From the NCBI RefSeq assembly GCF_046119375.1, contig NW_027362765.1, positions 531,278,001 through 531,342,000 of the forward strand: a DNA stretch of 64,000 nt, read 5' to 3'. This document shows, piece by piece, positions 1 through 30,973 of the stretch. The first letter of the stretch is position 1; each line of letters opens with the position of its first letter. The notes under the pieces were generated by a model. That model made no database searches. It worked only from the letters and a program-made list of their open reading frames with translations, and had not been told where the DNA came from. Position numbers and translations under genes: made by a program. Source of the DNA: Phyllobates terribilis. Taxonomy: Eukaryota.

Positions 1-404
1 TCTCCCTCTTCCAGGCCTGGGCCTCTGTTACTAGGCCCTCCTCCGGAGCACAGCTCATGCAGAGCCCCTGCTCCCTGCCACTTCTGCTCAGACTTCTCTG
101 CACTGAACTAAGATGGTGCCCACCTTTTATACTCCCTTCTCAATGCACCCAGGAACTGCTTCCTCCCTGCTCCTGCACTACAGGGTTCCCCTTCCTCAGT
201 GTTCCCTCCCCCCACTCCAGCCAGGGACAGGGACTGTCGTGCCCATCTCAGAGGCATATTGGTCACCCTGCCCCACGGCAATGTGGTGTAATGCATGCAG
301 GTGTCGGGTCCTGATCCACACTCCATCCTTAGCTGAGAGTGAGATATCACACCTCTGGGTCAGGTGCACTACCTCTGTAGCAACCGAGCCCTCAGGGTGC
401 TACA
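1..404 (-). mobile_element. Partial Gypsy-type LTR (5' part, truncated by window edge), same superfamily as 2136-3401 and 18146-20498
   Basis: Minus strand starts TGTAGCACCCTGAGGGCTCGGTTGCTACAGAGGTAGTGCACC, homologous to TGTGGCGCCCCTGAGGGTTCGACCGCCACAGGGATGCTGCACC (2136) and to the start of the 18146-20498 LTR. Confidence 0.75.
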
Positions 405-1636: not shown

Positions 1637-3572
1637 TGTCACGCTGTGACTGTAGAAAATCCGGGGAAGAGGGACCCTATACTGTCCCTTAATCCAGGGG
1701 AGCCCTAGTCTATCCCTAACCCCAGGGTTACCCCTGAAGGTGGAGATGCTCGGGTCTCATACCTCTCTGTACTCCCACGAAATCCTATGCTGATCCCACC
1801 CTTCTCCCCAGGGTGGAAAAGGGCAGGGGTAAAAGGGTAACACTGGTTGTACAGACAGGGAAAAACCAGGGCACAATAAAATGACAGACACACAGGATAA
1901 AATACAAAGGGAAAATGGGTGCACAGTAAAGAGGCAGAAAAGCAACACGAAAGAAGACCAATAGGGAAAGGTAGAGGTATTGACAACAAACTGCATGCAA
2001 CAATCTCAAGACAACAAGAGCGACTCTCCAGAACACTTTCTCCAATGAAGCCAGGAACAGAATGAAGATTCTATTGCTGGCATGGAGGGAAGCCAGACAC
2101 AGGTTTATATAATGGTAGGGTGTGGTTCCAATAAGTGTGGCGCCCCTGAGGGTTCGACCGCCACAGGGATGCTGCACCTCTTTAATGGGGTGTGGTGTTC
2201 GTTCCTCCTTTGAGGTAAGAACGGTGCAATATGGTCATGACCCCACCTCCACATCCAACACCACATTTCTCCCACCAGAGGGGGCTAGTAGGCACTAGTG
2301 TGCTGCCCCTACTGGAAATTGGGAGACTGGGGAACTAAGAGATAGGGGGAACTAATTAGTGGGTGAGGGTGGAGGACTCACATTTAGCTACACTTAATAT
2401 TCATATTTAATAATCAGCCATCTTGGGCTCATGGTTCTTTGATTGTGATCTCCCTCCCTGAATATGGTTTCTGGGAGAACCTGCAGTGGATGTGGACACG
2501 GCTCTCGTACCCTGGCCTTGGGTCGAGGGGCAGGTTGCAGATAACGTATGTCTCAACCCAGTCAAGGACCATGACCAAGAAGGCCCGGAGCTTAGGAGTG
2601 TAGCTCCAATGCAAAAGGATCCCAGGGGGAAGCAGACGGAGCGGTATACGCCACCTGTCCTCGCTATTCTGGCCTAGCCAGAGGGATTCCGGCTGCAAGA
2701 GGGGTACCGGCCCCCGACACCTGACCTTGCTACTCTACGTCCTGGTCAGGGAAGCCCAGTAGGCCCAGAGGATCCCACCGGGTAACGGAAGGAGCGGAGC
2801 TGCCACCCGTACCCTTTTTCTGAGCGAAGTCCAGAGGGAGACCCGGCCTATCTATACACACACAGACAGGAAAGGACTCCGATGTCTAGGAACACTCTGG
2901 TGCAGGGTCCTGATTGAACACTTGAATTACTCGGAGGTTGTCGTACCCCCGTCCCTGGTGACCGCAGAACTCCGTGAGGAGCAGGGAGAAGCCTTGCAGC
3001 TGTACTCTCACCATGAGTAAAAACCCTGGAAGTCGACCCCTATGGCCTCCGGACTCTTTAATTCTGCACCGGACCGCACTACGCAGCACCAGACCTCCTA
3101 CATTACAACCCCCTCCATCCTCGTCTCTGCCCTGAGGCCCTGTTCCGCCTGTGGGGAGTAGTATCAACGTCAGCTGCCATAACATCCTGCCTCAGAGGAC
3201 TGCAGCAGCGCTGGTGGCCTTCACCAGGTACCACAGGTGGGTTAGTCGATAGCAACCACTCAACCCTGATAGCCCATTACATCCTTTTTAATGTGACGGC
3301 CCTGGGCACAGAACGGGTCCAGGCCACGGCTGCACCCCACCAACAAGATAGGGCCCGGCTCCGAGTCCCCCATCTCCCAGGGTAGGGCTGTGAGCGTCAC
3401 ATAAGCAGCACAGCCAATAGACCACAAGGAACTCTAAACCCTTTCCATGCCACAAGAAACCTATTAACTCATGAATGGCCATGTAGATTTAAAGAAGACC
3501 TGTGCTCAGCTAATCAATCTTCTAATCTCAGATGTACTATAGGTCCCAGCAGAGTGCGGCACATTCATGACA
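1637..3572 (-). mobile_element. Solo LTR, interrupted by a second LTR at 2136-3401
   Basis: TGTCACG...CATGACA termini; exact 5-bp TSD TTTAT (1632-1636, 3573-3577). Confidence 0.85.
2136..3401 (+). mobile_element. Solo Gypsy-type LTR (1266 bp), cassette-free relative of the CSD-bearing LTR
   Basis: TGTGGCGCCCC...GCGTCACA termini; 4-bp TSD TAAG; AGTAAA polyA-like signal at ~3017; both ends homologous to 18146-20498. Confidence 0.88.
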
Positions 3573-7041: not shown

Positions 7042-7043
7042 GT

Positions 7044-7055
7044 AAGTCCAGCCCA
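7044..7055 (+). promoter_or_regulatory. Self-priming PBS (Tf1/sushi mechanism)
   Basis: AAGTCCAGCCCA is the exact reverse complement of TGGGCTGGACTT (6695-6706), which lies ~27 nt downstream of the TATA box; no TGG tRNA PBS present. Confidence 0.8.
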
Positions 7056-7088
7056 AAAAACTAAAAGGAAAGAAATTCAGGGATCAGT

Positions 7089-8705: not shown

Positions 8706-8847
8706 CTTTGTAAATGTTTTTTCCCAGCAATATGCGCTCCTGAAGGATGATGATGGAACTTGATATTCGGATTCAAAGAATTTTTATTTCAAACTAAAAT
8801 ACAACCGGTTTCGACTTCTTAGAGTCTTCCTCAGGTATAACATCATG
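8706..8847 (-). mobile_element. 142-bp Penelope-like (pseudo-LTR) retro-insertion in RT
   Basis: 15-bp TSD CATTTTCAGAATCTG (8691-8705, 8848-8862); splits GHF(Q/E)NLVMPFG, which is intact in copy 2; minus strand has hammerhead core then AATAAA. Confidence 0.75.
8799..8838 (-). ncRNA. Minimal type I hammerhead ribozyme motif
   Basis: Minus strand AUAC-CUGAGGA-A-GACU-CUAAGA-AGUC-GAA-ACCGGU-U-GUAU: core boxes, 4-bp stem II, palindromic stem III, GUU triplet, 4-bp stem I. Confidence 0.65.
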
Positions 8848-10281
8848 CATTTTCAGAATCTGGTGATGCCTTTTGGTCTAACCAATGCACCTGCATTTTT
8901 TCAGAACCTTAGTAATGACATCCTGAGACCTTTGATTGGTAAGAATGTAGTTGTGTATTTGGATGACATTTTGATTTATTCACCAGATCTGGAATCCCAT
9001 TGGCAGAGTGTACATGAAGTTTTGCAGTTATTGAGTGATAATTCACTCTTTGCTAAGCTGGAGAAATGTGAGTTCACTGTGCAGAAAATTAGTTTTTTGG
9101 GCTACATTGTCTCCAGCGAGGGCTTTGAGATGGACCCTGTGAAGGTTCAGGCTGTGCAGAAATGGCCTAGGCCTATTGGTTTGAAATCTATACAGAGATT
9201 TTTGGGTTTTGCCAATTATTACAGGAAATTCATTGAGAATTTTTCTGTAATTGCTAAACCTCTAACTGATCTCACTGGGAAAGGTGCGAATACGGCCCAG
9301 TGGACTACTGAGGCCATTGAAGCGTTTGAGTATCTCAAAGAGAGGTTCAGTTCTGCCCCTATCCTTATGCAGCCTGATGAGACCAAGCCTTTTTTGGTAG
9401 AGGTCGATGCTTCATCGGTGGGGGACAGAGCAGTTTTGTCACAGGAGAACAAGTGTGGAGTACATCCTTGTGCCTTCTTTTCGAAAAAAAATTCGGAAAC
9501 CGAACTGAATTATAATGTTGGAAATCGGGAGTTGCTGGCTATTAAACTTGCATTTGAACATTGGCATCATTTTTTGGAAGGCGCTAGATTTCTTATTCAG
9601 GTTTTCACAGATCATAAGAATTTGATCTATCTGGATGCTGCCAAGCGCTTGAATGCCCGTCAAGCTAGGTGGGCACTTTTTTTTTCTCGGTTTCATTTTT
9701 CTGTTACCTATATCCCTGGTACTAAGAATGTTAAAGCCGATGCTTTATCTCGCAGCTTCTCTCCTACGGTCGGTGCCGAGGAGGAGGAGAGCATTTTACA
9801 GAAAGGAGTTGTGGTGGCGGCATTGGACTCCGTTTTGGAGAATGGGATTCTGAAAGCTCAAGATGATGCTCCATCTAACACTCCCCATGGGAGGTTGTTC
9901 GTGCCTAGAGCCTTTAGGAGAGATTTGTTTGTGGAGTGTCATGAGTCTCGGTTGGCACGTCATCCAGGAATTTCGGAGACTAAGAGACTTATCAGTCACA
10001 GATGGTGCCTGGATGGCAGAAGGAAGTCATCAAGTGGGTGCGTCAGTGTACTGTGTGTGCTAGGTCAAAGGCTTCACATACTCCTGCTGTGGGGTTGCTT
10101 TGCTCTCTGGGGGTTCCAAGTGCGCCTTGGACGCATCTCACAATGGATTTTATTACTGATCTTCCTGTGTCCGAGGTTTTACTGTCATCTGGGTGGTCGT
10201 GGACCATTTTAGTAAGATGTGTCATTTGGTTCCATTCATTAAGTTGCCCTGCGCCAATACACTTGCTAAGGCGTTTGTTAA

Positions 10282-12793
10282 CCCTCCGTCACATACAATA
10301 TCGGTTCTAACGAGTTCACATACAATATGACTGTCAGGCGCAGGCTAGAAAAATACCTATAATATCTAATGTTTGCAATTTCAGTGCTCTAAAAGTGATC
10401 AGTGACCTTCATAGGGATGTAATAAAAGAGACTACACATAATCAGGTGCAAAAAAAAAACATTTACTTAACATAAAACTAATAACTCTGAAATACAAACA
10501 TTTCAAAACTCCCACCAAATAGTCCCCAGTTCGACTCTGTCAAAAAACTCTACAAAGAAAATTTATGGAAACAAACTTAATTTTAAGGTACCTTAAGTAC
10601 TATTAAACACATATTCAATCAGAATTAGATCCTGAAGTTTCCCCAGAAAAATTACACTTGCAGAGCAAAGAGCAAGAATTACACATCACTTTTGCATGTG
10701 TCAGGCAGATTGCATTATGACATTTGTGACATTCATAATTAGAAAGCCTTCTGATTCCGCTTTCCGTGGTGCAGGTGGTGCATCTCCTTCTTTTGGGAGG
10801 TGGTGCAGGTGGTGAATTTTCACTATCATCTTCTGGGCGGAATCTTTTGAGCTGAACTTGAAGGCGAGAGGGGATACCGATTGTTTTCATACTTCTCCTG
10901 TGTAGCTTTCCAAGCACTAATTCATGGGCCAATTTTTTCAGATAGAATCATCTACGGAGTGGTTCAAGCTTGTTTTCAAGGTAAATGACTTGTGAATTTA
11001 TACCACCCAAATTCAACATAGCAAAAAATATGACCATTGGCCAGCGTTTGGTGTTTCTGCTGACGTTGAAAGTTGGACACATCTGATCAGCTGTATCAAC
11101 ACCCCCTTTGGTTGCATTATAAAATGTAATTATCTCCGTTTTTTTTTTGTGCCTCAGTCCCAGGATCGATGGCATCATCATCATGAAGTGTTGATAGAAG
11201 AAGTACAATTTTTTTTGCTTGTGGTACATAGGAAACCAAAACCTTTCCATTATGGAATGCAAACATACTGCTGTACTGTTGTCTCCCTTTCACACTTACA
11301 AACTGTGTAGGCAATTCTTTTTTATTTTTTCTTACAGTTCCGACATATGAAAGCTTCTGCATTTTCAGATAATCAATCAGATCACAATTTGAAAACCAAT
11401 TGTCAGCTGTTATATTGCGACCCGATCCAAATAAGGGCTCAGCCAGTCTTTTTACAACATCACTGGGTTTGTTGCTGACACAGTAAGGACCTTCTGGTTG
11501 TTTTCCTGCATAAACTTCCAGGTTGTAAGTGAAGGTCTTACTGGCATCAACAAGGGCATACATTTTTATTCCATATTTGTTAGGCTTTGATGGAATATAT
11601 TGACGAAAGGCACATTTACCACGAAAACCAGGGAGCATTTCTTCAATAGTGAGATTCTCCCCAGGGCAATAGCTTTTTTTACAGTTTTCAACAAATTTTT
11701 GGAATATATCACGAATTGGAGCAAGTCGGTCATGTGTTTTACGTTCGGTTCGGGTAGTTCTGTCGTCAAACCGAAGGCAATGAATTAGAAGCTTGAATCT
11801 GTTTATGGACATAACAAGGCCAAATTTTTCAACTCCATCCCCATCTTTACTCCAAAGTTCCTCCAAACTTTGTCTATTTGCCCTATAAGCTCCTGCAAGG
11901 TATAATAATCCAAAAAAAGCACGCAGTTCTATTTCATCTGTGGCCTTGATGGTTCTGTTGCAGATGAACTTGTCCTTTATAATGTCTATATATTGGTTGG
12001 TATATGTGACAATAGAGTCCAGAATGTCATCTGTGAATAAACTATTCCAGCATTCAACTGCGGCTTTTGCATTACTTGCAGTTCCTATAACTGCAGGAAG
12101 GTGAGTAATAATGTTTTGAGGTTCCCTACGTTTTTTCTGGACTGGCTTCTTGTTCCATTGTTTTTTTTTATCTTTTCCAATATAATAAGATTCTACATCT
12201 TCATCCTCATCACTGTCACCATCTTGCTCTGTTTCAGAATCCACTTCACATACTTCGACCTCATCATGAGAATCAATCTCACTTTCCTCTCCTAAATCCT
12301 CATTCAGTGTGGGGTCTGCATAATCTAACAGCATGTTTGTTACTTCCTCAACATCAAGTTTTTTTGATAAATTGTACATTTTCCTCTCCATTTCAGCAGA
12401 TAATCTGAAGCAAGAGAAGGAATATGTGTTAGGGAACTACTGTATATGCCTGAGCAGCACACTTTCTTTTTAATCTGCCTTATTTCTATGAAATATCCTC
12501 ACACTTTGTGCTATACATTCATAAAACAAGCTAAATAAACAATTGTGATGAATAAAAACATAAAATACCAACCTTATTGAGTGTGACGTGTTCACATACA
12601 ATGAGCCTGAGAGATTAGCGCAGTTATATCTGTCCTCCTGAAGCTCTGCAATCCAACTGTGGTATGAGGTTTCACAGAGCTGCTAGAGACAGGAGACTAC
12701 CTGGAGGGAGGGGATTTCCTCACAATCTGGTGAGGAAGGAGAAATGAAAGTAAAAGAGATGTGCCTGTCAGGCCTATTGTATGTGACGGAGGG
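10282..12793 (-). mobile_element. piggyBac DNA transposon (2512 bp) inserted in the integrase gene
   Basis: TTAA TSD (10278-10281, 12794-12797); perfect 19-bp TIR CCCTCCGTCACATACAATA; removal restores AFVKEIVKLHG as in copy 2. Confidence 0.97.
10615..12391 (-). pseudogene. piggyBac transposase with three lesions
   Basis: FRQYIPSKPNKYGIK, RNITADNWF, TKGGVDTADQM, C-terminal Cys-rich domain; first catalytic D is E (TIEE, 11642-11644), frameshift at T10 run 11139-11148, TGA at 10948-10950. Confidence 0.93.
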
Positions 12794-13705
12794 TTAAGGA
12801 GATTGTCAAGCTCCATGGCGTTCCCACAGATATTGTTTCTGATAGAGGACCTCAGTTTGTGGCTCGCTTTTGGCGTGCTTTTTGTGACAGGTTGGGAGTC
12901 CATTTGTCATTTTCATCTGGGTATCATCCTGAGTCTAATGGACAGACTGAAAGAAAGAACCAGGATGTAGAACAGTTTTTGCGTTGTTTTGTGGCGGACA
13001 ATCAAGAGGTGTGGTCTGAGTTTCTGCCTCTCGCAGAATTTGCTCTTAACAATCATACATCCTCCTCTGCTGGGTGTTCTCCTTTTTTTTGTTGTACTGG
13101 GAGACATCCGACTTTTGGTTCGTTCTCCAAATTGGGGTCGGCGGTGCCGGAGGAGAATTTTTCCAGTGATTTGGAGAGAGTTTGGACTAATGTACGTTGC
13201 AACCTTCAAGAGGCTAACAAGAAGTCCAAGAAGTATTTTGACAGGAAACGTAAGGAGGTTTTGTTTACTGTGGGTGACATGGTTTGGTTGTCCTCGAAGA
13301 ACCTGCGGTTGAGGATTCCCTCTAAAAATCTGGGTCCAAAGTTTGTGGGTCCATTTAAAGTGCTTCAGGTTGTTAACCCGTCTGCTGTTAGGTTGGACGT
13401 CCCTACTTCCTCGAAGATTAATCCTGTGTTTCATGTTTCCTTGTTGAAAAAGGCTGATGTATCTGATAGGGACGCCACTGTCACAGTTCCTCCTGTTGTG
13501 GAAGACGGCGAATATGAAATTTTTCGTATCTTGAATTCTACATGGCATAGAGGGAGATTACAGTATCTTGTCTCCTGGAAGGGTTTTGGTCCCGAAGACA
13601 ACTCCTGGGTAAGGACGGATGATGTCTCTGCTCCTAGGCTTGTTAAAGCTTTCCACAGGAGGTTTCTGGATAGGCCTGGGCCTGGAGGATCCAGAGGATC
13701 CTCAT

Positions 13706-13716
13706 AAAAGAGGGGG
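13706..13716 (+). promoter_or_regulatory. Polypurine tract of copy 1
   Basis: AAAAGAGGGGG three bases before the 3' LTR. Confidence 0.85.
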
Positions 13717-13719
13717 TAC

Positions 13720-14153
13720 TGTTAGAACCCTCCTGTTTGTTTTTTCCATCTTGTGTTTTGTGGTCACGTGACCATCTGCCTTTATATTCCAGCTCCGCCC
13801 TTGTGGCTGTGTTGGACTTCAGTGTTTGACTGTTTCTCTAGCCTGGTGCTTCGGTGCCTTTTTTTGTCAAGTTCGCTTGGTCCTCTGGGACCTCTAGTAC
13901 TTTTTGTCAGTTTGTCTTTTTGTGTTCTGCAACAACTTCTCTATTTAGGAGGTGTCCCATTTTTGTCCCAGTCCTTAGTTCTTTTAGGGACCCCTCCCTT
14001 AATTCTATAGGTCTTCGTTCAGACTAGCCGAGGACTAAGGCGGGTCTGTTCACTAGGAACAGGCAGCCCGCTACATCGTAGGGATTCAGCTTAGTCTTAC
14101 TGTAGGGACAGCTTTCCCCTATCTTTCCTTAGTACATGTTGCAGATCATAACA
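13720..14153 (+). repeat. 3' LTR of copy 1
   Basis: Direct repeat of 6607-7041, followed by TSD GCAAC. Confidence 0.97.
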
Positions 14154-16719: not shown

Positions 16720-18139
16720 AAAAATGACCCTCACACACAGTATGATATTCCCACAATGAATCCCTCTCCCCAAAGTCTCACCCCACACATACAGTAGGAT
16801 GACTCCACAGTGCCTCCAACAAAGTATGATGTCCCCACAGTGGCAGTAACACATTATAATAACCCCACAGATTGATGCCCCTAAAGTGCTCCCCCATAGT
16901 TTGATCTCTCCATAGTCCCCAACACATACACAGTATCATGGCCCCCACATAATATGATAGCCTATCAATATGATGTTCCCCACTCAATATGAGAGCCCCC
17001 TACTCAGTATGAGGGCCCCCACAGCCCCTTACTCAGTATGAGGCCCACCACAGCCTCCTACTCAGTATGAGGACCCCACACAGTATAAGGGCTCCCCACA
17101 CAGAATGAGGGCCCTCACAGCCCCCACACAGAATGAAGGCCCCACAGCCTCCCACTAAGTATTGGAGGCACCATATCCCCCCACTCAATATGGGAGCCCC
17201 CTCTGCCCCCTACTCAATTTGATAGCCCCTCACACAGAATTAGGGCCCTCACAGCCCCCCACACAGAATGAGGGCCCCCACAGAATGAGGTCCATCACAT
17301 CCCCCCACTCAGTGTTGGATCCACCACAGTCCCCCACTCAGTATGGGAGCCCCCACAGTCCCCAACTCAGTATGGGAGGTCCTCACAGTCCCCCATAGCC
17401 CCCCATTTAGTATAATGGCTTCCACCAGCCCCCCCCCCACTGAGAATAATGGCCCAGATCTACCCACCATTCACTATAATGGCCCACTTATCACGAGGGC
17501 TCCCACTATCTCCCTACTCAGTATGAGGGCCCCCACTGCTCCCTACTCAATATGATGGCCCATACAGCCTTCTACTCAGTATGAAGGCCCACACAGATCT
17601 CCACATAGAATGAGGGCCGCCACAGCACACCACTTGCTATGAGGGCCCCCACTCATTATGAAAGCCAAGACAGTCCCCCACAGCCCCCATTCAGTATAAT
17701 GGCCCCCACCAGCCTCCCACTCTGAATAATGACTGACTCAGTATAAGGACCTCCATCAGCCCCCCTCCAACAGTATAAGGGCCACTATAATTACTAACAT
17801 TTAAAAAAAAAAACACTACACCTCACGTTGTTCCCCCGGCACGTTGCGGTCTGTGCAGTGTGAGTACTGAGGAGCCAAACTGCAGGCACAATGTAGTGGC
17901 ATCATCGCGCCTGTAGTGCACAGAGTCTCTTACTCACAGGTGCAGTTTGAATGGTGGATCACTGAGCTTTCGACTCCCTGATCCACCATTCTATTCAATG
18001 GTATCGGCATCCTAGGGGTGCAGATACTGCTGAAATTGTGTTGACGAGGGGAGGGGGCCAAATGCCACCCTGCCCCCCTCCCCGACTCACAGGCCTCATA
18101 GCAGTTACTTGGGCTGCCACTATGAAAGGTATGCCCCTG
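16720..18139. mobile_element. Non-autonomous hAT-like element with internal CCCCACACAGTATGA-type minisatellite
   Basis: Degenerate ~20-30 bp C-rich tandem units 16720-17790; ends GGTATGCCCCTG (CAGGGGC-type TIR); left end not found. Confidence 0.55.
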
Positions 18140-18145
18140 ATATAG

Positions 18146-20498
18146 TGACGCGCCCCCTAGGCCGTGGGATACTCGGTAGCCGGGCCGGTCGATGCTGGGG
18201 ATGTCACAGTGGCAGTGACCCGGTCTGTGACCCAGGGCAGTCAATTAAAGGGGAAAGTGAAAGGGGAATAAAGTTTTTATAGATATAATGCTCGTAACGC
18301 CACCTGTGGTATGCGGCAATATGGGGCCTCGGCTATATGGGGCCGTCGCTGCGGTGCAGATCCACTGGAGCTGATGGTGACGCAGCAGAGTTGGTTCAGC
18401 TCATCACAGGTAGAGCTAAGCTCCAGGGCAGTAAATGATGATTTGTATGAGGTAGATGTTGCTGGTGCGGTGTAGTGCAGGGCTGGTGATAGCGCAGCAA
18501 TTATTCAAGGACACAGTGGGGTGCAGTCTTCAGGTTTTACTCACAGTTGTTAAGTTCCTCAGGTTACACTTTCCGGATTATAACCGCCCACGTCGTCCTG
18601 TATTCACCAAGGAAGGGGTTCAGCAGCTCTCAAGTATTTCAGGAGTACTTAAACGGGACCCCGTTCTATGTTCCTTTCTCAGTCGTCTTCCTGCGCTGGC
18701 TCTCGCTCTCCTGCCCTGCGCCTCACAATCAGTGTCCCAAGCCAGTAGCCTCGGATCTTGTCAGGCGACGTGCAGTCCCCTGGACCCTATGCGGCCACAT
18801 TTTTGACGATGTAATTGTGGTAATGGGCAGCTGCACTTTGAAAGTACAGAAGCCTCCGGTTATCTAGCTGAGCCTGATTGTTCTCCACTAGTTTAGGGGC
18901 CGGTCCCCTCTGTGGCCTGATCCCTCCACATCCGTGTAGATTCTGGCGCACGGGTGGCTTCTGCACTCACCGTGCCCCTACGATACCCTCAATCTCTGGA
19001 GCCTTCCCTCTGCTCCTGTCCTCTCTCTCTCTTTCCTGGGCCTCTCTTACTAGGCCCCGCTCCTCTCAACTCCTGCTCCAAGCACTGGAGCCAGGAGCCT
19101 GGACCTCCTCCACTGCTCTCCTGAGCAGGACTCGCTCTGACTGGACTCTCCCCTTCTAGATGGTTCCCATCCTTCTTATACTCCTACTGACGGTGCTCCC
19201 CTGATCTTCTTCTTCCTCCACCCACACCCACTACATGGTTCCCCCTCTCTTGGTTTTTGTTCGGTGGTCATGATAAAACCACCAAGAAACACCTTAAGAA
19301 GTGAAAACTATTTACAAAGGAAAGTTTTTAGCTGCTCACCATCCACAGACTAAGTGTCCTTGTACCTTTACCGGGTACACTAAACAAATAAACAAAAAAC
19401 ATTTTAAACACACAGCATTCCTGCTATACCCCTACGGGTAACTATATACAGGTTCTTTCACTTTTAACTGGGTAGTTTGACATTGGTGCTCCCTCCTGGT
19501 AGACACCTGTCCACTATAGGCTGGCCCAGCAGGGTCGTCAGCCTGGGACAGGAGAGGCATGTCCTCCTCCTCCTCCACTACCCTGCGTACATGGAGGGCA
19601 TACCATCCACGCGGTCCCTTATGCCGGGTATAGGTGACACGGTCACCAGGGTATAGGTCCCGGCCGAGATGTCTCTGTTGGAGATGGGACTCCACGTCCC
19701 GCCGGTTCACGAAAAAGTCCTTTGACAGCTGTGGCTTCCGAATGAAGCCCCATCCGGCATCCAGGTCGAATTTGACTACAGTCCCTTCTGCATGGGGACT
19801 GGGTGTGGCTGGCTTTACCTTGTGGGCCCGGGCTTTCTCCTCGATATTGAGGGCCTCCATTCTCTCCCACCGCTTCTGTCGCTCCTGGCGCTCTGCTGTC
19901 AGCTTCTGGAGCTCCCACTGGCACTGTTCCTCCCTCCGGAGGGCCTCGGTCTCGGTCTCCCTCGGGAACCCCATGAAGTTACCCTCCTGTTTGTCCCACC
20001 GGAACTCTTCTCCTCCCTGGCAGGCAACCGGGGATGCATACGTGGTTAATAGAGGGGCTCCCTGCTAGTCCTCGAACTTTGTGGACCAGTCCCATGTGGG
20101 GCGCCCATACACCCAAGCGCGTGCGGGGGCAGGGGGTTCCTGTAGGGGCCCCAGGAGCAGATTGGTGCTGTCAGTGTCTGGGGAAGGAAGTTCCTGTAGG
20201 GGTCCCAGGAGCAGGTTGACGTTGCAGGCGCCCGAGGCAGGGGGCTCATGTAAAGGGCCCAGGAGGACCCACACCCACTACATAGTTCCCCCTCTCTTGG
20301 TTCCCCCCCTTCCAACCAGGGACAGGGCTCAGCAGTGGATTCATGCATCTTGCCCCTCCTGCTGGTCTGGAATGGTGTAGTGTTGGAGGCAGGTGGGTGG
20401 GTCCCGGGTAGAACTCCCTCCTTACCTGAGAGTTGGGTACCACACCTCTGGGTGAGATGCAGTACCTCTGTGGCGACTGAACCTGCAGGGGCGCCACA
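18146..20498 (-). mobile_element. Solo Gypsy-type LTR (2353 bp) carrying a cold-shock-domain cassette in U3
   Basis: TG...CA termini; 4-bp TSD ATAG (18142-18145, 20499-20502); both ends homologous to 2136-3401; minus-strand TATAAG (~19175-19180) and AGTAAA (~18535-18540) downstream of the ORF. Confidence 0.88.
19432..19974 (-). CDS. Coiled-coil plus cold-shock domain (CSD/OB-fold) protein, 180 aa; frame extends to 20274 across one TAG
   Basis: aa 63-132 EGTVVKFDLDAGWGFIRKPQLSKDFFVNRRDV...LYPGDRVTYTRHKGPRGWYALHVRRV aligns to CspA consensus GTVKWFN..KGFGFI.....KDVFVH.......L.EGQ.VEF......KGP.A.NV; RNP1 GWGFI, RNP2 DFFVN. Confidence 0.82.
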   Translation of the reverse strand: MGFPRETETEALRREEQCQWELQKLTAERQERQKRWERMEALNIEEKARAHKVKPATPSPHAEGTVVKFDLDAGWGFIRKPQLSKDFFVNRRDVESHLQQRHLGRDLYPGDRVTYTRHKGPRGWYALHVRRVVEEEEDMPLLSQADDPAGPAYSGQVSTRREHQCQTTQLKVKEPVYSYP

Positions 20499-20649
20499 AT
20501 AGCTCTATAGGGGATTTATTTCTTTTAAAAATCATGTCAGGAATATACATTTTAATGTTGTAGTTGCAGATAAATTTACTTTTATTTCATATGCAAATGA
20601 AGGTGCCTTGGGGCTTCCTTGGTGTGACCAAGAGTTCAGTGCACTGTTA

Positions 20650-21275
20650 AGGCCCCGTCACACTAAGCGATATCGCTAGCGAGATCGCTGCTGTGTCACG
20701 GTTTTGGTGACTCACCAGCGACCTCACCAGCGATGTCGCTATGTGTGACACTTTGCAGCGATCAGGCCCCTGCTGTGAGGTCGCTGATCGTTGCAAAGTG
20801 TTCTGGACCATTTTTTGGTCGTTGGCCTCCCGCTGGCCAGCACACATCGCTGTGTGTGACCAGCGGGACCAACGATCTGGCTGGTAACCATGGTAAATAT
20901 CGGGTTACTAGGGGCACACGCGCACTTAGTAACCCGCTGTTTACCATAGATACCACTCTGCTACGGTGAGCGGAGGCTCCAGCGCACCGTAGCATAGTGG
21001 TATCCATGGTAAACAGCGGGTTACTAGGGGCACACGCGCACTTAGTAACCCGATATTTACCATAGTTACCAGCCTGCTCCTGCTTAAGCAGCAGGCTGGT
21101 AACGGGAGCAGGACATCGTGGAACGATTCTTTCCACGATATCGCTGCTCCCCTCATCGCTGGTGAGCCTGCCTGTTTGACAGCTCACCAGCGATGTATTA
21201 GCGATGCAGCAACGATCCCTGACAGGTCGTATCGTTGTCGGGATCGCTGCTGCATCGCTTAGTGTGACGGGGCCT
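20650..21275. mobile_element. PIF/Harbinger-type palindromic MITE
   Basis: TIR AGGCCCCGTCACACTAAGCGA; 3-bp TSD TTA; nested internal inverted repeats. Confidence 0.9.
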
Positions 21276-22092
21276 TTACACCCTCCACTTTGTATAAAGA
21301 GCACTGTTCCTTATCTTGATTGACAGTATTCACTGTGCAAGAGTGAGTGCTACCTAAACTCAATTCTATCTTTCTGCACATGCACACTGACACTGAACTA
21401 GCCCAGCAGCTTATTCATAGGCCCCAATTAATCAAGATCAGTGATTTTCTCAACAGGTGAAAGTCCATGGCAGACAGCTCCACCCCCTCTTCAACTCCTG
21501 ACCCAGCTGCTCCACTCCTCCCCCTGCCAGAGACTTTGCAGTGACGTAGAAATGTAGTTCTAGTGATGACTCCTGCAAGGCAAAGAGACTTCCTGTAGAG
21601 CTTAGAAGTATTCACCTCGTCTGTTTTTAATCATGTGATGTCATAGACCTAATGGAAAAGAGAATAATTAACTGGGTAAAAAGGCAAAATGAGCAATTGT
21701 AAGTACACATAATATGATGACTACAATATATTAAGAGGATAACAGAGGATGCGTAATGCCTGAAGAAGGAATCTGTCCTATTTCAAAATGCATACCCCTA
21801 TACATTTTAATAAAATATTTAAAGCCCTCACCTGTCACACAAGGTGTGGGAAAGACTTAGTGCAACACAGAGGGAAGAGGGAAAGGGAACCAGACACTAG
21901 GGAAAGAGGGGAGTGGAGACCACCTAGTCTGGTCTAGTGTCACCCTGTCTCAACTACAGTCCCTATATTGGCTCTTCACCAATCGCTGCACGCGTGCCTC
22001 GCCCTGACTTTCCCTGGCGTATGGCTAAGGCTAGGGAAGGAAGGAGATGAGCATTAGTCGATCTCCACTAAACTCTATAGACAACAAGAGTA

Positions 22093-23662
22093 CAGTCATG
22101 GCCAAAAGTTTTGAGAATGACACCAAAATTATATTTTCACATGATCTGCTGGCCTCTGGCTTTTATTAGTGTTTGTCTGATGTTTATATCACTTACAGAA
22201 ATATAATTGCAATCATATTATGAATACCAATAGGTTATATTGACAGTTAGAATGAGTTAATGCAGCAAGTCAATATTTGCAGTGTTACCCCTTCTTCTTC
22301 AAGACCTCTCTAATTCTCCCTGGCATGCTCTCAATCAACTTTTGGACCAAATCCTGACTGATAGCAGTCCTTTCTTGCATAATCAATGCTTGCATTTTGC
22401 CAGAATTTGTTGGTTTTTGTTTGTCCACCCGTCTCTTGATGATTGACCACAAGTTCTCAATGGGATTAAGATCTGGGGAGTTTCCAGGCCATGGACCCAA
22501 AATCTCTATGTTTTGTTCCATGAGCCATTTAGTTATCACCTTTGCTTTATGGCAAGGTGCTCCATCATGCTGAAAAAGGCATTGTTGGGCGCCAAACTGC
22601 TCTTGGACGGTTGGGAGAAGTTGCTCTTGGAGGACATTCTGGTACCATTCTTTATTCATGGCTGTGTTTTTAGGCAAGACTGTGAGTGAGACGATTCCCT
22701 TGGCTGAGAAGCAACCCCACACATGAATGGTTTCAGGATGCTTTACAGTTGGCATGAGACAAGACTGGTGGTAGCGCTCACCTCTTCTTCTCCGAATAAG
22801 CTGTTTTCCAGATGTCCCAAACAATCGAAAAGGGGATTCATCAGAGAAAATGACTTTGCCCCAGTCCTCAGCAGTCCACTCCCTGTACCTTTTGCAAAAT
22901 ATCAGTCGGCCCCTGATGTTTTTTCTGGAGAGAAGTGGCTACTTTGCTGCCCTCCTTGAAACCAGCCCTTGCTCAAAGAGTCTCCGCCTCACAGAGCGTG
23001 CAGAAGCACTCACACCAGCCTGCTGCCATTCCTGAGCAAGCTCGGCACTGCTGGTAGTCCGATCCCGCAGCTGAAACAGTTTTAAGATACAGTCCTGGCG
23101 CTTGCTGGTCTTTCTTGGGCGCCCTGGAGCCTTTTTGACAACAATGGAAGCTCTCTCCTTGATGTTCTTGATGATGCGATAGATTGTTGACTGAGGTGCA
23201 ATCTTTGTAGCTGCGATACTCTTCCCTGTTAGGCCATTTTTGTGCAGTGCAATGATGGCTGCACGTGTTTCTTTAGAGATAACCATGGTTAACTGAAGAG
23301 AAACAATGATACCAAGAACCAGCCTCCTTTTAAAGTGTCCAGTGATGTCATTCTTACTTAATCATGACTGATTGATCACCAGCCCTGTCCTCATCAACAC
23401 CCACACCTGTGTTAATGGATCAATCACTAAAACGATGTTAGCTGCTCCTTTTAAGGCAGGACTGCAATGATGTTGAAATGTGTTTTGGGGGTTAAAGTTC
23501 ATTTTCTGGGCAAATATTGACTTTGCAAGTACAGTAATTGCTGTTAAGCTGATCACTCTTTGACATTCAGGAGTATATGCAAATTGCCATTACAAAAAAT
23601 GAAGCAGTAAACTTTGGAAAAATTACTATTTGTCTCATTCTCAATACTTTTGGCCATGACTG
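22093..23662 (-). mobile_element. Tc1/mariner transposon, DD35E (Traveler-type), full length
   Basis: TA TSD; TIR CAGTCATGGCCAAAAGT; 1570 bp. Confidence 0.95.
22285..23286 (-). pseudogene. DD35E transposase with a single nonsense codon
   Basis: GRPR; FSDES; QHD-35 aa-E (SPDLNPIE); one in-frame TAG at 22939-22941, frame otherwise open. Confidence 0.92.
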
Positions 23663-24668
23663 TAGACAAACAAGGGGGAATTGCTTAGCTTTAGGCAACT
23701 CCAAACAAATGCGCACATGGCTTCAAGCTCCAGAGACGACAAAGTACTGCTCTTGCTAAAGCCTCACAAGTAGTAGTGAAGCACCTCCTTCTCAGACACA
23801 CCAGGTATTTATACACCCAGGCCAGGAAGCTAATTAGCAAGAGGGAGGTAGCCGCTGGGTCCTAGAGACAGCCAGCCTCTAAGAAGATGTCTGTAATGCC
23901 AAACGTAGAGATCTCCTGCAACCAACTGCAAGCCGATTGTCTATCACCTCTGACACACCCGTGACATCACCAATCACTCCATTGAAGTTTCTTCTCTGAA
24001 TCCCAGGGAACACCAAGGAATAGCCCACATTTTCCACTGTTATCTTGAATATACAGTACAGGCAATAGCTCTATCATTCATACATGACATGTAGGTGTTT
24101 GGGATCCAAACGCAATATCTGCAGGTTAGCATAACAATATTCTTGCTCTCTTCTATTTTGTTTTTAACTTTTAAGTACTTTTCCTACTTGTCCTAGATAT
24201 ATAGGGATTGTCAAGAAAACAGTTTGCAAGAAAGTTAGTCTACTCCTTTGTTCCACCTGTTATAATTCTTTGACTACTTTTATTTACCAACTTAAGTGAA
24301 TCACTCAGTGGACTTGGAGGAGAATGAGTTATACTTCAGAACTGTTTGTATTTTTTCTGACTGTACATTTAAATGTAAATGTTGGATCAAATAAAAGAAG
24401 AGCTGACATTCAGGTAAGGTATTCACAATGAAGTAAAGCGTCCTCTGAAGTTCTGATGATACATACTTAACCTCTAACCAGAGGCGAGAGTGTCCTCCAT
24501 GACTACAAAACTAGTGTTTAGAGTAATTGAGGTTTCCAAGCAATCTGTACAGATAAAATAAGACGGAATAAAACGCACACAGATCCTTGTGTGTGTTTTT
24601 ATTATTATTATTTCTGATTAAAGAGGAATTCATTTCATCTCTGCCTCCTGCCAGGGGCTGAGGTGCCG

Positions 24669-24808
24669 NNNNNNNNNNNNNNNNNNNNNNNNNNNNNNNN
24701 NNNNNNNNNNNNNNNNNNNNNNNNNNNNNNNNNNNNNNNNNNNNNNNNNNNNNNNNNNNNNNNNNNNNNNNNNNNNNNNNNNNNNNNNNNNNNNNNNNNN
24801 NNNNNNNN
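24669..24808. other. Assembly gap (140 N)
   Basis: Run of N. Confidence 1.
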
Positions 24809-26445: not shown

Positions 26446-27464
26446 ATGGGAAAGTCTAAAGAAATCAGCCAAGATATCAGAGAATTGTGGACTTGCACAA
26501 GTCTGGCTCATACTTGGGTGCAATTTCAAGATACCTGAAGGTGCCTCGTTCATCTGTACAAACAATTACATGCAAGTACAAGCTAGATGGGAATGTCCAG
26601 CCATCATACTGGTCAGGAAGGAGATGGGTTCTGTGTCCCAGAGATGAACGTGCTTTGGTTCGACATGTGCATATAAACCGAAGGACAAAAGCAAAAGACC
26701 TTGTGAAGATGATGCCGGAAGCTGGTAAGATTGTGTCAATATCCATAGTGAAACGAGTACTGCATCAACATGGACTGAAAGGCCACTCTGCCACAAAGAA
26801 GCCATTTCTCCAAAAGAAACATAAAAAAGCCTGATTAATGTTTGCAAATGCACACAGGAACAAAGACCTTAATTTTTGGAGACATGTCCTGTGGTCTGAT
26901 AAATCTCAAATTGAACTTTTTGGGCATAATGACCATCATTACATTTGGAGGAAAAAGGGAGAAACTTGGAAGCATAAGAACACCATCCCAACTGTGAAAC
27001 ACGGGGGTGGCAGCATCATGTTGTGGGGTTGTTTTTCTACAGGAGGGACTGGTGCATTTCACAAAATTGATGGCATCATGAGAAAAGAAGATTATGTGGC
27101 AATACTGAAGCAACATCTCGAGACATCAGCCAGGAAGTTAAAGCTTGGGCGGAAATGGGTCTTCCAAATGGACAATGACCGGAAGCATACTGCCAAAATG
27201 GTAACAAAGTGGCTTAAGGATAACAAAGTCAATGTTTTGGAGTGGTCATCACAAAGCCCTGATCTCAATCCTATTGAAAATTTATGGGCAAAGCTGAAAA
27301 GGCAGGTGCAAGCAAGGCGACCTAAAAACCTGGATCAGTTACACCAGTTTTGTCAGGAGGAATGGGCCAAAATTCTGACCAATTATTGTGAGAAGCTTGT
27401 GGAAGGGTCTCCCAAACGTTTGACCCCAGTCATTCAGTTTAAGGGCAATGGTACCAAATACTAA
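26446..27464 (+). pseudogene. SB-family DD34E transposase
   Basis: MGKSKEISQD..., KVPRSSVQTI, KNTIPTVKHGGGSIMLWGCF, QMDND...SPDLNPIE, KGNGTKY; frameshift near 26478 and TGA at 26832-26834. Confidence 0.92.
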
Positions 27465-29628: not shown

Positions 29629-30973
29629 CAGTGGCATGTAAAAGTTTGGGCACCCAGTTTAATGGGGCTATATAAGTGAGTAAAATAAGGCCTAAAGTTA
29701 AAGATGACACATTTCCTTTGTATTTTAGGCAAAACTTATATATATATTTTCATCTTTTACATTTTAAAAATGACAAAAAGGAAAATGGGCCTATGAAAAA
29801 GTTTGGGCACCCTGCATAGGTAGTATCTGGTAGCACCCCCTTTTGAAAATATAACAGCTTGTAAATGCTTTTTGTAGCCAGCCAAGAGTCTTTCAATTCT
29901 TGTTTGAGGGATTTTCATCCAGTCTTCCAGTTCTGTGAGATTCCAGGGTCGTATTGCATGCACAGCTAATTTTAGGTCCAGCCACAGATTTTCAATGATG
30001 TTCAGATCAGGGGACTGTGAGGGCCATTGTAAAATCTTCAGCTTGCGCCTTTTGAGGTAGTCTATTGTCGATGTTGATGTCTGTTTAGGATCATTATCCA
30101 TTTGTAGAAGCCATCCTCTTTTCAACTTCAACTTTTTTACAGATGGTGTTAAGTTTGCATTAAGAATTTGTTGAAATTTCATTGAATCCATTCTTCCCTT
30201 TTGCCTGAAGCACAACCTCAAAGCATGATTGATCCACCCCATGCTTAATGGTTGGCGAGATGTTCTTTTCCTGAAATTCTGTGCCCTTTTTTCTCCACAC
30301 ATACCTTTGATCAATATGGCCAAAGAGTTCTATTTTAACCTCATTGGTCCACAGAACTTGTTTCCAAAATGCATCAGACTTGTTTAGATGTTGTTTTGCA
30401 TACTTCTGATGCTGAATTTTATGGCGAGGACACAGGAGAGGTTTTCTTCTGATGACTCTTCCATGAAGGCCATGTTTGTGCAGGTGTCTCTGAACAGTAG
30501 AACAATGTACCACAACACCAGAGTCTGCTAAATCTTTCTGAAGGTCTTTTGCAGTCTGATTTGCCTCTCTAGCAATCCTACCAGCATCTCTCACTGAAAT
30601 TTTGCTTGATCTTCCAGACCTTTTATTAACCTCCACTGTTCCTGTTAGCGACCATTCCTTAATTACATTTTGAACTGAGGAAAGGACATCTTGAAAACAC
30701 TTTGCTATCTTTTTATAGCCTTATCATGCTTTGTGGCTTGCCACCATTTTCATTTACAGAGTGCTAGTCAGCTGCTTAGAAGAACCCATGGCTGCTGCTT
30801 TTTGGCACAAGGTTAGAAGAGGCTGGGTTTTTGTAAAGCTGGGAAATTTGCATCACCTGGCCTTTCCCAATGATGATAGTGAACAAACCATAACCCTAAC
30901 AGGCTAATTAAGGTCTGAAACCTTGGTCAAAGTTTTCTGAGCACAAGGGTGCCCAAACTTTGACATGCCACTG
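29629..30973 (-). mobile_element. Degenerate DD34E Tc1 (Frog Prince/Passport-like), partly deleted
   Basis: TIR CAGTGGCATGT(A)AAAGTTTGGGCACCC at both ends; internal DR at ~29798; TA on the left only. Confidence 0.85.
29822..30789 (-). pseudogene. Tc1 transposase pseudogene
   Basis: GLHGRVIRRKPLL, VLWTNEVKIELFG, QMDNDPK...WPSQSPDLNIIE, KGGATRY; several stops, frameshifts and deletions. Confidence 0.88.

What the first reader, a model, noticed from the sequence alone, without database searches (positions are those of the whole stretch)
19432..19974. Cold-shock-domain protein encoded inside the U3 of a retrotransposon LTR
Seen: an open 180-aa frame with an E/R/Q-rich coiled-coil followed by a CSD (19579-19788; RNP1 GWGFI, RNP2 DFFVN, GDRVTY, KGPRGWYA). 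It lies inside a TSD-bounded solo LTR, in LTR sense, upstream of the TATA-like and polyA-like signals. Known: U3-encoded accessory genes exist in retroviruses (MMTV sag, HIV nef overlap), and CSDs are ssRNA/ssDNA chaperones (CspA, YBX1, Lin28, CSDE1). The sequence is not close to YBX/Lin28 (no KWFN, no VHQ). Inference: a Gypsy family carries its own RNA-binding accessory protein, possibly a chaperone for genomic RNA or reverse transcription, or an antagonist of small-RNA or translational control in oocytes. I know of no description of this, but could not search.
Basis: partly seen in the sequence, partly recalled or inferred. Interest (0 to 1): 0.85.

Follow-up and report, generated by a model that had tools for sequence, protein, structure and literature searches.

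The report
Truncated frog cold-shock gene inside LTR
The reading frame does encode a real cold-shock (RNA/DNA-binding) domain and does sit in the promoter-proximal part of a solo retroelement LTR, but it is a cut-off, once-interrupted copy of a poison-frog-specific gene that was inserted secondarily into this LTR, not a built-in accessory gene of a Gypsy element.

Summary
Observation confirmed. ORF 19432-19974 (-) is 180 aa. It passes Pfam's CSD cut-off (32.5 vs 27 bits), and its model is a long helix plus a five-stranded barrel (TM 0.86-0.91 to bacterial Csps). It lies in sense inside a 2,353-nt LTR-like repeat (18146-20498, TG..CA, imperfect terminal inverted repeat, 4-bp TSD), upstream of a conserved TATA.

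Interpretation only partly supported.
- The ATG is an internal Met. Homology to the only close relatives runs upstream of it. These relatives are six "uncharacterized" proteins of dendrobatoid frogs; the five NCBI models are 380-550 aa and single-exon. The frame then continues through one in-frame stop to the edge of a 1,011-nt segment.
- That segment (19256-20266) is flanked by a 36-nt direct duplication of LTR sequence.
- A complete related solo LTR (2136-3401, own 4-bp TSD) and a partial one (1-404) carry that 36-nt block once and have no CSD segment.
- The window's two Ty3/Gypsy elements have unrelated 441-nt LTRs, and the one checked has a 5-bp TSD.

Best reading: a 5'-truncated host-gene fragment captured in U3, probably by reverse-transcriptase template switching, and probably a passenger. 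Copy number, the parent gene and expression could not be tested because no frog genome DNA was reachable. Modest interest.

The parts
18142..18145 (.). Target-site duplication ATAG, left copy
   Evidence: It matches 20499-20502.
18146..20498 (-). LTR-like repeat, 2,353 nt (1,306 nt without the inserted 1,047 nt). It has TG..CA ends and an imperfect terminal inverted repeat. It is a solo copy: no PBS-like or PPT-like flank and no gag/pol next to it.
   Evidence: It is colinear with the related solo LTR at 2136-3401.
18536..18541 (-). PolyA-like signal AGTAAA in a block shared with the related LTR copy
19175..19180 (-). TATA-like box TATAAG, 40 nt downstream of the second 36-nt repeat copy. The block is conserved in the partial copy at 1-404.
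19220..19255 (-). 36-nt direct repeat, downstream copy (LTR sequence; purine-rich tract followed by TGTAG)
   Evidence: It is identical to 20267-20302 at 35 of 36 positions.
19256..20266 (-). Inserted 1,011-nt segment: 5'-truncated copy of a dendrobatoid CSD-family gene plus 176 nt of 3' non-coding sequence
19432..20266 (-). Coding frame of the CSD-family gene fragment. It is a broken gene: 5' truncation at the junction, one in-frame stop, and no frameshift detected. It covers family-profile positions about 141-403 of 431.
19432..19974 (-). The 180-aa ORF of the finding. It starts at an internal Met of the family alignment and ends at the native stop region.
19822..19953 (-). Long E/R/Q-rich alpha-helix (ORF residues 8-51)
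   Evidence: pLDDT 94-98.
19579..19788 (-). Cold-shock domain (ORF residues 63-132)
19256..19431 (-). AT-rich 3' non-coding tail of the inserted segment. It has no poly(A) run and no AATAAA near its end.
20267..20302 (-). 36-nt direct repeat, upstream copy
20303..20498 (-). 5' part of the LTR (U3), shared with the two related copies. The first 30 nt can form a 7-bp hairpin.
20499..20502 (.). Target-site duplication ATAG, right copy
2136..3401 (+). Comparator: complete related solo LTR, 1,266 nt, TG..CA, own 4-bp TSD TAAG (2132-2135 and 3402-3405). It has the 36-nt block once and no CSD segment.
1..404 (-). Comparator: 5' part of a related LTR, cut by the window edge. It has the 36-nt-equivalent block once, followed directly by the TATA block, and no CSD segment.

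Best explanation
The ORF is the 3' part of a member of a small family of proteins with the layout disordered N-terminus, long helix, CSD, acidic tail. The family is known so far only as 'uncharacterized' predicted proteins of dendrobatoid (poison) frogs; the five NCBI gene models are intronless. A 1,011-nt piece of such a gene was inserted in sense orientation into the U3 part of a roughly 1.3-kb LTR of unknown superfamily. The piece lacks about the first third of the coding region, carries one in-frame stop, and keeps the native stop and 176 nt of 3' non-coding sequence. The insertion duplicated 36 nt of LTR sequence at the insertion point. The most likely route (inferred) is capture of a co-packaged host transcript by two template switches of reverse transcriptase during minus-strand synthesis through U3. 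This is the retroviral-transduction type of event. Re-entry upstream of the exit point would produce the 36-nt duplication. The new U3 would be copied into both LTRs, and LTR-LTR recombination later left this solo LTR. Shown: the domain, the homologs, the truncation and interruption, the LTR bounds and TSD, the 36-nt duplication, and the absence of the segment in related LTR copies. Inferred: the template-switch route, the host origin of the family, and the lack of function here. In this copy the segment is most likely a passenger. It lies upstream of the LTR's own TATA, so only read-through transcripts would contain it, and its first ATG is an internal codon. If translated, the product would be an N-terminally truncated, probably oligomerising, single-stranded nucleic-acid binder.
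For: The CSD is real. Exhaustive HMMER over 1.84 billion representatives finds only six close relatives, all from Phyllobates, Ranitomeya and Anomaloglossus. The ORF matches their C-terminal part: ORF residues 1-150 align with P0002 residues 267-415. BLASTP of the open stretch ending at the ORF's stop aligns with P0003 from residue 3 of 210, so homology runs about 28 codons above the ATG. On a family HMM this stretch covers positions 201-403 of 431 at 190 bits. The stretch above the interruption covers positions 141-187 at 6.6 bits, against -2.0 +/- 1.4 for shuffles, with 1 of 3,000 shuffles reaching the real score. The two stretches are colinear and in the same frame. The five NCBI homologs are single-exon, each 90% cluster has one member on one contig, and the genes called nearby are ordinary host genes. 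A more distant 'FVNRR'-type relative in Bufo bufo has a gene range longer than its CDS, so it contains an intron and looks like a host gene. A 36-nt direct repeat (35/36 identical) flanks the segment exactly. The related LTR copies at 2136-3401 (complete, with its own TSD) and 1-404 pass straight from that block to the GGAGGA... continuation. The segment is in the same orientation as the LTR. Its 3' end has no poly(A) and no AATAAA. These two points fit template switching better than LINE-type retrocopying.
Against: No frog genome DNA could be fetched, so several things are unknown: the copy number of this LTR-plus-segment, the state of full-length elements, the parent gene in this species, and the sequence context of the homologs. 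The comparator LTRs are diverged subfamilies, with only blocks conserved, so they do not exclude a subfamily in which every copy carries the segment. The family is intronless, so 'spliced versus unspliced' cannot show an RNA intermediate. Microhomology at the junctions cannot be checked without the donor sequence. The CSD portion is fully intact: 12 of 13 invariant and 29 of 32 near-invariant family columns are kept. That fits either a young passenger or a maintained gene.
Confidence: 0.6

Rival explanations
1. One reading: the CSD protein is a maintained accessory gene of an LTR-retroelement lineage. It would be carried in U3, and so present at the 3' end of the genomic RNA. It would act as an RNA chaperone or RNA-binding antagonist of host control. 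The 'uncharacterized' frog proteins would be other copies of it.
For: The ORF lies in U3, in sense, upstream of the TATA. The helix plus CSD is intact and keeps nearly all family-conserved residues. The family is intronless, multi-copy per genome, fast-evolving and lineage-restricted, which is how TE-borne genes often look. The architecture of helix plus nucleic-acid-binding domain resembles retroelement chaperones by analogy.
Against: The ATG is an internal family position, and the frame above it is homologous, interrupted once and cut at the junction. The segment is bounded by a 36-nt duplication and is absent from both related LTR copies in the window. Homologs are single-member clusters beside ordinary genes, with no near-identical paralogs as an amplifying element would give. 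Foldseek against viral structures finds only phage and giant-virus CSDs, and no retroelement protein. No splice or start signals were shown.
Confidence: 0.12
2. Post-integration insertion unrelated to the LTR's own replication. A 5'-truncated retrocopy made by a non-LTR (LINE or Penelope-type) reverse transcriptase, or a templated insertion during DNA break repair, landed in an existing LTR. It produced a 36-bp target duplication. The shared orientation would be coincidence.
For: The direct repeats flank the segment exactly, as a TSD would. The 5' truncation is typical of target-primed reverse transcription. LINE fragments are present in the window, for example next to the copy at 1-404. The same orientation has a 50% prior probability.
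Against: There is no poly(A) or A-rich tail and no polyadenylation signal at the 3' junction, although the repeats differ at only 1 of 36 positions, which points to a young event. A length of 36 bp is long for LINE TSDs (established knowledge). The target sequence at the junction is G-rich rather than T/A-rich.
Confidence: 0.2
3. The host repeat is not an LTR but a non-autonomous DNA transposon with terminal inverted repeats and a 4-bp TSD. The gene fragment would then be a transduplicated passenger of the Pack-element type.
For: The terminal inverted repeat is imperfect but about 12-16 nt long, there is a 4-bp TSD, and no internal coding region is linked to it in the window.
Against: The ends are TG..CA. 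Along one strand the order is U3-like part, then a conserved TATA block, then a conserved AGTAAA block, in two copies. A length of about 1.3 kb and a single orientation of these signals are as expected for an LTR. No transposase-related sequence is present.
Confidence: 0.05

Closest known systems
Host-mRNA capture by endogenous retroviruses (crocodilian ERVs with KIT-ligand and nectin3; PMC4299795, read) and classical retroviral transduction
   Same: Host-type coding sequence in sense orientation, embedded in LTR-element sequence on both sides. The presumed route is co-packaged RNA and template switching.
   Different: Those captures sit in the internal region, span the whole host ORF, occur in several copies and show purifying selection. 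Here there is a truncated, interrupted fragment in U3 of one solo LTR, with a 36-nt flanking duplication.
U3-encoded or U3-overlapping retroviral accessory genes
   Same: An ORF lies within U3, in sense, upstream of the LTR promoter.
   Different: Those genes have their own start and splice acceptor and are present in every copy of the virus. Here the start is an internal codon, the upstream frame is broken, and related LTRs lack the segment. There is no sequence or fold relation.
Additional ORFs and gene-fragment capture in LTR retrotransposons of plants and rotifers (abstracts of PMC7264820, PMC5408684, PMC13317346 and bioRxiv 10.1101/777037, seen)
   Same: LTR elements carrying non-gag/pol coding sequence of host or unknown origin.
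   Different: These are mostly internal (upstream of gag or downstream of pol), not in U3. None was reported with a CSD: no paper among the top-ranked titles listed held 'cold shock domain' together with the LTR-retrotransposon terms, and the four holding it with 'retrotransposon' and 'ORF1' concerned host factors or plant RNA-binding proteins.
Cold-shock domain proteins (bacterial CspA/CspE/Bc-Csp; vertebrate YBX1/2, CARHSP1, LIN28, CSDE1)
   Same: Same five-stranded barrel (target TM 0.86-0.91 for Csps, 0.76 for YBX1). The RNP1 aromatic pair and the RNP2 Phe are kept.
   Different: Only 25-31% identity. The beta-1 Trp and the RNP2 His of YB-1 are replaced. The domain is preceded by a 44-residue helix and, in full-length relatives, a long disordered N-terminus. 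The nearest named relative outside poison frogs is a Bufo bufo protein that NCBI calls 'YBX2-A-like'.
LINE-1 ORF1p (functional analogy only; established knowledge)
   Same: Coiled-coil-type helix followed by a single-stranded nucleic-acid-binding domain, which is the layout of an oligomeric RNA chaperone.
   Different: ORF1p uses an RRM plus a C-terminal domain, not a CSD. No homology was detected, and no ORF2 or reverse transcriptase is linked here.

Membership tests
Cold-shock domain (Pfam PF00313) | Profile match above the curated cut-off | tested here: met
   32.5 bits against a cut-off of 27, E 8e-8, profile positions 2-65 of 66.
Cold-shock domain (Pfam PF00313) | Five-stranded antiparallel beta-barrel (OB fold) | tested here: met
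   The AF2 model has strands at 91-100, 105-109, 116-120, 142-150 and 153-161 of the 210-aa piece, with pLDDT mostly above 90. Foldseek target TM is 0.86-0.91 to Csps.
Cold-shock domain (Pfam PF00313) | RNP1 and RNP2 nucleic-acid-binding motifs | tested here: inconclusive
   RNP1 is GWGFI, with both aromatics kept. RNP2 is FFVN, where the Phe is kept and the His is replaced. The beta-1 Trp of YB-1 aligns with Lys. Binding itself cannot be tested here.
Y-box proteins (YBX1/2/3) | CSD closely similar to the YBX CSD | tested here: not met
   YB-1 scores 18 bits, E 0.015, about 28% identity. No YBX protein is among the close hits of the exhaustive search.
Dendrobatoid helix-CSD protein family (P0001-P0004, P0007, P0031) | Colinear homology over helix, CSD and tail | tested here: met
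   E 7.5e-30 to 1.7e-20, with 46-57% identity over the matched stretches. The family HMM gives 190 bits over positions 201-403 of 431. 12 of 13 invariant columns are kept.
Dendrobatoid helix-CSD protein family (P0001-P0004, P0007, P0031) | Complete, uninterrupted coding region with the N-terminal part | tested here: not met
   About the first 140 profile positions are missing, cut at the junction with the 36-nt repeat. There is one in-frame stop and no frameshift seen.
Solo LTR of an LTR retroelement | TG..CA ends, short terminal inverted repeat, flanking TSD | tested here: met
   Ends at 18146 and 20498, 9 of 12 terminal match, TSD ATAG. Joint chance is 0.3% of shuffles. A second family copy at 2136-3401 has its own TSD, TAAG.
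Solo LTR of an LTR retroelement | U3-R-U5 signal order (TATA then polyA signal) on one strand | tested here: met
   TATAAG at 19180-19175 and AGTAAA at 18541-18536. Both sit in blocks shared with related copies. These are motifs only; function is not shown.
Solo LTR of an LTR retroelement | Paired copies flanking PBS, gag/pol and PPT somewhere in the genome | not testable with these tools
   The window's two Ty3/Gypsy elements (6607-14153 + and 32967-37938 -) have unrelated LTRs of about 441 nt. The first one, which was checked, has a 5-bp TSD, against 4 bp here.
U3-borne accessory gene of a retroelement | Present across copies of the LTR family | tested here: not met
   It is absent from both related LTR copies in the window. 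The same subfamily elsewhere in the genome could not be tested.
U3-borne accessory gene of a retroelement | Self-contained ORF with its own start | tested here: not met
   The ATG aligns with an internal position of the homologs, and homology continues upstream of it.
Transduction-type gene capture by an LTR element | Foreign coding sequence in sense orientation, bounded on both sides by element sequence | tested here: met
   The segment 19256-20266 lies between two copies of a 36-nt LTR block, in the same strand sense as the TATA and polyA signals.
Transduction-type gene capture by an LTR element | Identifiable host parent gene in the same genome | not testable with these tools
   Only homologs in other species were found. 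The exact ORF is not on record anywhere.
LINE-mediated processed retrocopy | Poly(A) tail preceded by a polyadenylation signal at the 3' junction | tested here: not met
   The 3' end of the segment has at most a 3-5 nt A run and no AATAAA or ATTAAA in the last 170 nt.

The most novel reading that the evidence does not exclude
The helix-CSD gene is a true retroelement passenger that became an accessory gene. On this reading an LTR/ERV-like lineage of poison frogs has carried it in U3 and spread it, and the 'uncharacterized' intronless CSD proteins annotated in Phyllobates, Ranitomeya and Anomaloglossus are U3-ORFs of other copies. It would be the first retroelement-borne cold-shock-domain protein, acting as an RNA chaperone or a shield for the element's RNA.
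Probability: 0.12. Interest if true: 0.75.

Novelty: new member of a known kind. Interest (0 to 1): 0.3.

Why it matters
As it stands, this is one more example of an LTR retroelement picking up a piece of a cellular gene. That process is well documented in plants and known from ERVs of reptiles. Here it is seen in a frog and, unusually, inside U3 with a clean 36-nt junction duplication that records how it happened. The by-product may be more useful than the finding itself. A small, fast-evolving, intronless family of 'disordered N-terminus, long helix, CSD' proteins appears restricted to poison frogs, with more distant 'FVNRR'-type relatives in a toad. It has no described function. If a genome-wide census showed that LTRs spread this gene, it would be a new kind of retroelement accessory protein. 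If not, the locus is an ordinary passenger fragment.

Tried and rejected
1. Word-indexed protein searches were of little help. The ORF alone found only P0001. The family alignment was swamped by low-complexity words. The P0002 C-terminal region found nothing new. The exhaustive HMMER job was what revealed the family.

Their LTR context, dN/dS and junctions could therefore not be examined.

3. Exact look-ups found nothing, so the species could not be named. This covered the ORF and six TE ORFs of the window.

4. Two metagenome scans, one with the protein and one with the 36-nt block, looked for frog DNA present as contamination. Both found nothing.

5. tblastn of all family proteins against the window found no other fragment of the gene.

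6. Rice Retrosat2 ORF0 was checked as a possible 'ORF in a long LTR' precedent. It lies upstream of gag-pol, not in the LTR.

7. I considered whether the purine-rich-plus-TGTAG 36-nt block marks the true LTR start, with the 196 nt upstream of it being internal sequence. I rejected this. Three copies share the same upstream terminus next to unrelated flanks, and the two complete copies have matching inverted ends and their own TSDs.

8. I wondered whether the LTR 5' terminus resembles a primer-binding site. I dropped the idea because it rested on letters recalled from memory and ARAGORN found no tRNA in the window to compare with.

9. The BFVD fold search gave no retroelement protein.
Full report
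OBSERVATION. The ORF at 19432-19974 (minus strand, 180 aa) is present as described. Pfam's CSD model matches residues 63-131 at 32.5 bits, above the curated cut-off of 27 (E 8e-8). NCBIfam gives only weak Csp-type matches. PDB sequence search gives YB-1 and CspA at 16-18 bits. An AlphaFold2 model was built on an 18-row alignment, using a 210-aa piece that starts 30 codons upstream of the ATG. It shows one 44-residue helix (pLDDT 94-98) followed by five strands (pLDDT mostly above 90). Foldseek against PDB returns only cold-shock proteins: target TM 0.86-0.91 for CspE, Bc-Csp and CspA, and 0.76 for YBX1. The viral structure library returns only phage and giant-virus CSDs and no retroelement protein.

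RELATIVES. An exhaustive HMMER search of 1.84 billion representatives found 147 hits. Only six of them form a close family (E 7.5e-30 to about 5e-8). They are P0001 (Ranitomeya imitator), P0002 (Phyllobates terribilis, 431 aa), P0003 and P0031 (Ranitomeya variabilis), and P0004 and P0007 (Anomaloglossus baeobatrachus). All are named 'uncharacterized' or 'unnamed', and CSD is their only Pfam domain. The other hits checked are generic CSD matches such as dinoflagellate multi-CSD proteins, apart from the 'FVNRR' relatives described below. The five NCBI models are single-exon, because the gene range equals three times the residue count plus the stop. Each is a one-member cluster on one contig. The genes called nearby are ordinary ones: a guanylate cyclase, a WD40 protein and a fibrinogen-domain protein. 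More distant relatives share the 'FVNRR' form of RNP2. One is a Bufo bufo protein that NCBI names 'YBX2-A-like'; its gene range exceeds its CDS, so it has an intron. Two others are ORFs from an unidentified sequencing run. No frog genomic DNA could be fetched for any of these.

THE ORF IS A FRAGMENT. In every full-length homolog, the counterpart of the ORF is the C-terminal part: ORF residues 1-150 align with P0002 residues 267-415, and ORF residues 2-138 with P0003 residues 159-300. The ATG aligns with an internal position. The reading frame stays open above the ATG, and BLASTP to P0003 aligns from residue 3 of the 210-residue open stretch (alignment A1). Further up, the same frame continues through one in-frame stop to the edge of the inserted segment. 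On an HMM of the five full-length proteins, the lower stretch covers profile positions 201-403 of 431 at 190 bits. The upper 66-codon stretch covers positions 141-187 at 6.6 bits, against -2.0 +/- 1.4 for 3,000 shuffles of the same residues, only one of which reaches the real score. The two stretches are colinear and in one frame. The gene copy therefore lacks roughly the first third of the coding region, has one in-frame stop and no detectable frameshift, and keeps the native stop region. The CSD and helix are well preserved: 12 of 13 invariant and 29 of 32 near-invariant family columns are kept. No other piece of the gene lies elsewhere in the window.

THE LTR. On the minus strand the repeat starts TGTGGCGCCCC at 20498 and ends ...GGGGGCGCGTCA at 18146. 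The ends match 9 of 12 as inverted repeats. The 4-bp duplication ATAG flanks it. CA plus TSD alone is found in 58% of shuffles, but with the terminal match only in 0.3%. A second, complete copy of a related LTR lies at 2136-3401 on the plus strand. It has the same 5' terminus, TG..CA ends and its own 4-bp TSD, TAAG. It is colinear end to end through conserved blocks, including the AGTAAA block and the 3' end. A third copy, at 1-404 on the minus strand, is cut by the window edge and sits next to a LINE-like fragment. TATAAG at 19180-19175 and AGTAAA at 18541-18536 give the order U3, R, U5 on the minus strand. No PBS-like or PPT-like sequence and no gag/pol adjoin it, so 'solo LTR' fits. Its superfamily is open. 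The window's two Ty3/Gypsy elements (6607-14153 + and 32967-37938 -) have unrelated LTRs of about 441 nt, and the first one, which was checked, has a 5-bp TSD. 'Gypsy' is therefore not supported.

THE JUNCTIONS. A 36-nt block occurs twice, at 20267-20302 and 19220-19255, and 35 of 36 positions are identical. These two copies flank exactly the 1,011-nt segment at 19256-20266. In both related LTR copies the block occurs once and is followed directly by the GGAGGA... sequence that follows the second copy here (alignments A3 and A4). Without the 1,047 nt, this LTR is 1,306 nt, against 1,266 nt for the complete comparator. The segment is therefore a secondary insertion into U3, 40 nt upstream of the TATA, in LTR sense. 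Its 3' end has no poly(A) run and no AATAAA. The block itself is a purine-rich tract followed by TGTAG. It resembles the PPT-plus-LTR-start junction of the window's Gypsy element. I note this without explaining it.

MECHANISM.
- Shown: the points above.
- Inferred: the segment entered as RNA by two template switches of reverse transcriptase while U3 was being copied, with re-entry 36 nt back. This would give both LTRs of the new copy the segment, and LTR-LTR recombination would later leave the solo LTR.
- In favour of this route: the sense orientation, the arbitrary 5' and 3' breakpoints, the lack of poly(A), and a duplication longer than usual LINE TSDs.
- Main rival (0.2): a post-integration retrocopy or repair-templated insertion.

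In a solo LTR the segment lies upstream of the LTR promoter, so only read-through transcription could express it. By structure, the full-length family is probably an oligomerising binder of single-stranded RNA or DNA. That is an inference from fold and motifs. The beta-1 Trp and the RNP2 His of YB-1 are not conserved.

KNOWN PARALLELS. ERVs of crocodilians captured KIT-ligand and nectin3 mRNAs (PMC4299795). Plant and rotifer LTR elements carry additional ORFs or gene fragments (abstracts). No paper among the top-ranked titles listed held 'cold shock domain' together with the LTR-retrotransposon terms. The four papers holding it with 'retrotransposon' and 'ORF1' concerned host factors or plant RNA-binding proteins. 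Novelty: a new member of a known kind (gene-fragment capture by an LTR element), with an uncharacterised frog CSD family as a by-product.

LIMITS AND SLIPS. Copy number, the parent gene, dN/dS and expression were not testable with the data reachable. I made three slips.
1. The references I used to search the two pieces separately also end at it.
2. In my private working I also noted which residue of a homolog aligns with that stop.
3. While wondering whether the LTR 5' end looked like a primer-binding site, I recalled tRNA and primer-binding-site letters from memory, including those of a known retrovirus.

I stopped when I noticed these. None of those letters entered a tool call or a conclusion. 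The consensus lines that the alignment tools printed were not used.

Noticed in passing
window 6607-14153 (+): Ty3/Gypsy chromovirus-type element with gag, protease, RT-RNase H, integrase zinc-binding, SH3 and chromo domains. Its 441-nt LTRs are 96.8% identical and it has a 5-bp TSD, GCAAC. The pol region is split over several ORFs. A piggyBac-like transposase ORF (PF13843, 424 aa) on the opposite strand at 11117-12391 looks like a nested insertion..
   Followed up: partly
window 32967-37938 (-): Second copy of the same Ty3/Gypsy family, about 90-93% identical to the first. Its LTRs are 92% identical and gag-pol is broken into at least six ORFs. It sits inside a G-rich, strongly GC-skewed repetitive array (about 31200-32960 and 37940-38670), as if inserted into a satellite-like tract..
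   Followed up: partly
window 636-999 (-): Fragmentary match to eukaryotic SSU rRNA: Rfam RF01960, 64.6 bits, spanning model positions 4-1116 in only 364 nt. It lies between two LTR copies. It could be an rRNA-derived pseudogene or repeat..
   Followed up: no
window 20464-20498 (-), 370-404 (-), 2136-2170 (+): The first 30 nt or so of all three related LTR copies can form a 7-bp hairpin (TGTGGCG...CGCCACA). The copy at 1-404 keeps it through two compensatory changes (TGTAGCA...TGCTACA). The folding energies are not significant on their own (z -0.9 to -1.2)..
   Followed up: partly
window 19220-19255 and 20267-20302: The duplicated 36-nt block is a purine-rich tract followed by TGTAG. It resembles the PPT-plus-LTR-start junction of the window's Gypsy element (AAAAGAGGGGGTAC then TGTTAG at about 13707-13725), although it lies 196 nt inside this LTR. 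It is conserved in all three related LTR copies..
   Followed up: partly
window 20645-21280: MITE-like element directly beside the LTR. It has 27-nt terminal inverted repeats (96% complementary) and an internal 98-nt palindrome. The 180-aa ORF on it has no Pfam match..
   Followed up: no
window 16900-17800: Array of degenerate 29-nt tandem units (C-rich, of the ...CCCCCACTCAGTATGGGAGCC... type) just outside the LTR's 3' flank..
   Followed up: no
window 22091-23664, 26838-27464, 29757-30636, 54425-55240: Several Tc1/mariner-type copies (DDE_3 and HTH_Tnp_Tc3_2 domains). The first has 48-nt terminal inverted repeats. An assembly gap (N run) lies at 24669-24808..
   Followed up: no
L001 369-710 and L002 1069-1653 (Logan run SRR32377442); P0088 (Bufo bufo XP_040278526.1): More distant 'FVNRR'-type CSD relatives exist outside poison frogs. 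They score 38-43 bits against this ORF, whereas YB-1 scored 18 bits in the separate PDB search. The Bufo protein is named 'YBX2-A-like' but looks nearer to this family than to the Y-box proteins. The organism behind the sequencing run is unknown..
   Followed up: partly
window 20072-20266 (-): The 5' end of the inserted coding fragment consists of about 2.6 tandem 54-nt (18-codon) units encoding LLGPLQEPP-like repeats. The homologs have one LGP(L/V) unit at the matching place. The junction with the LTR falls at the start of a unit..
   Followed up: partly
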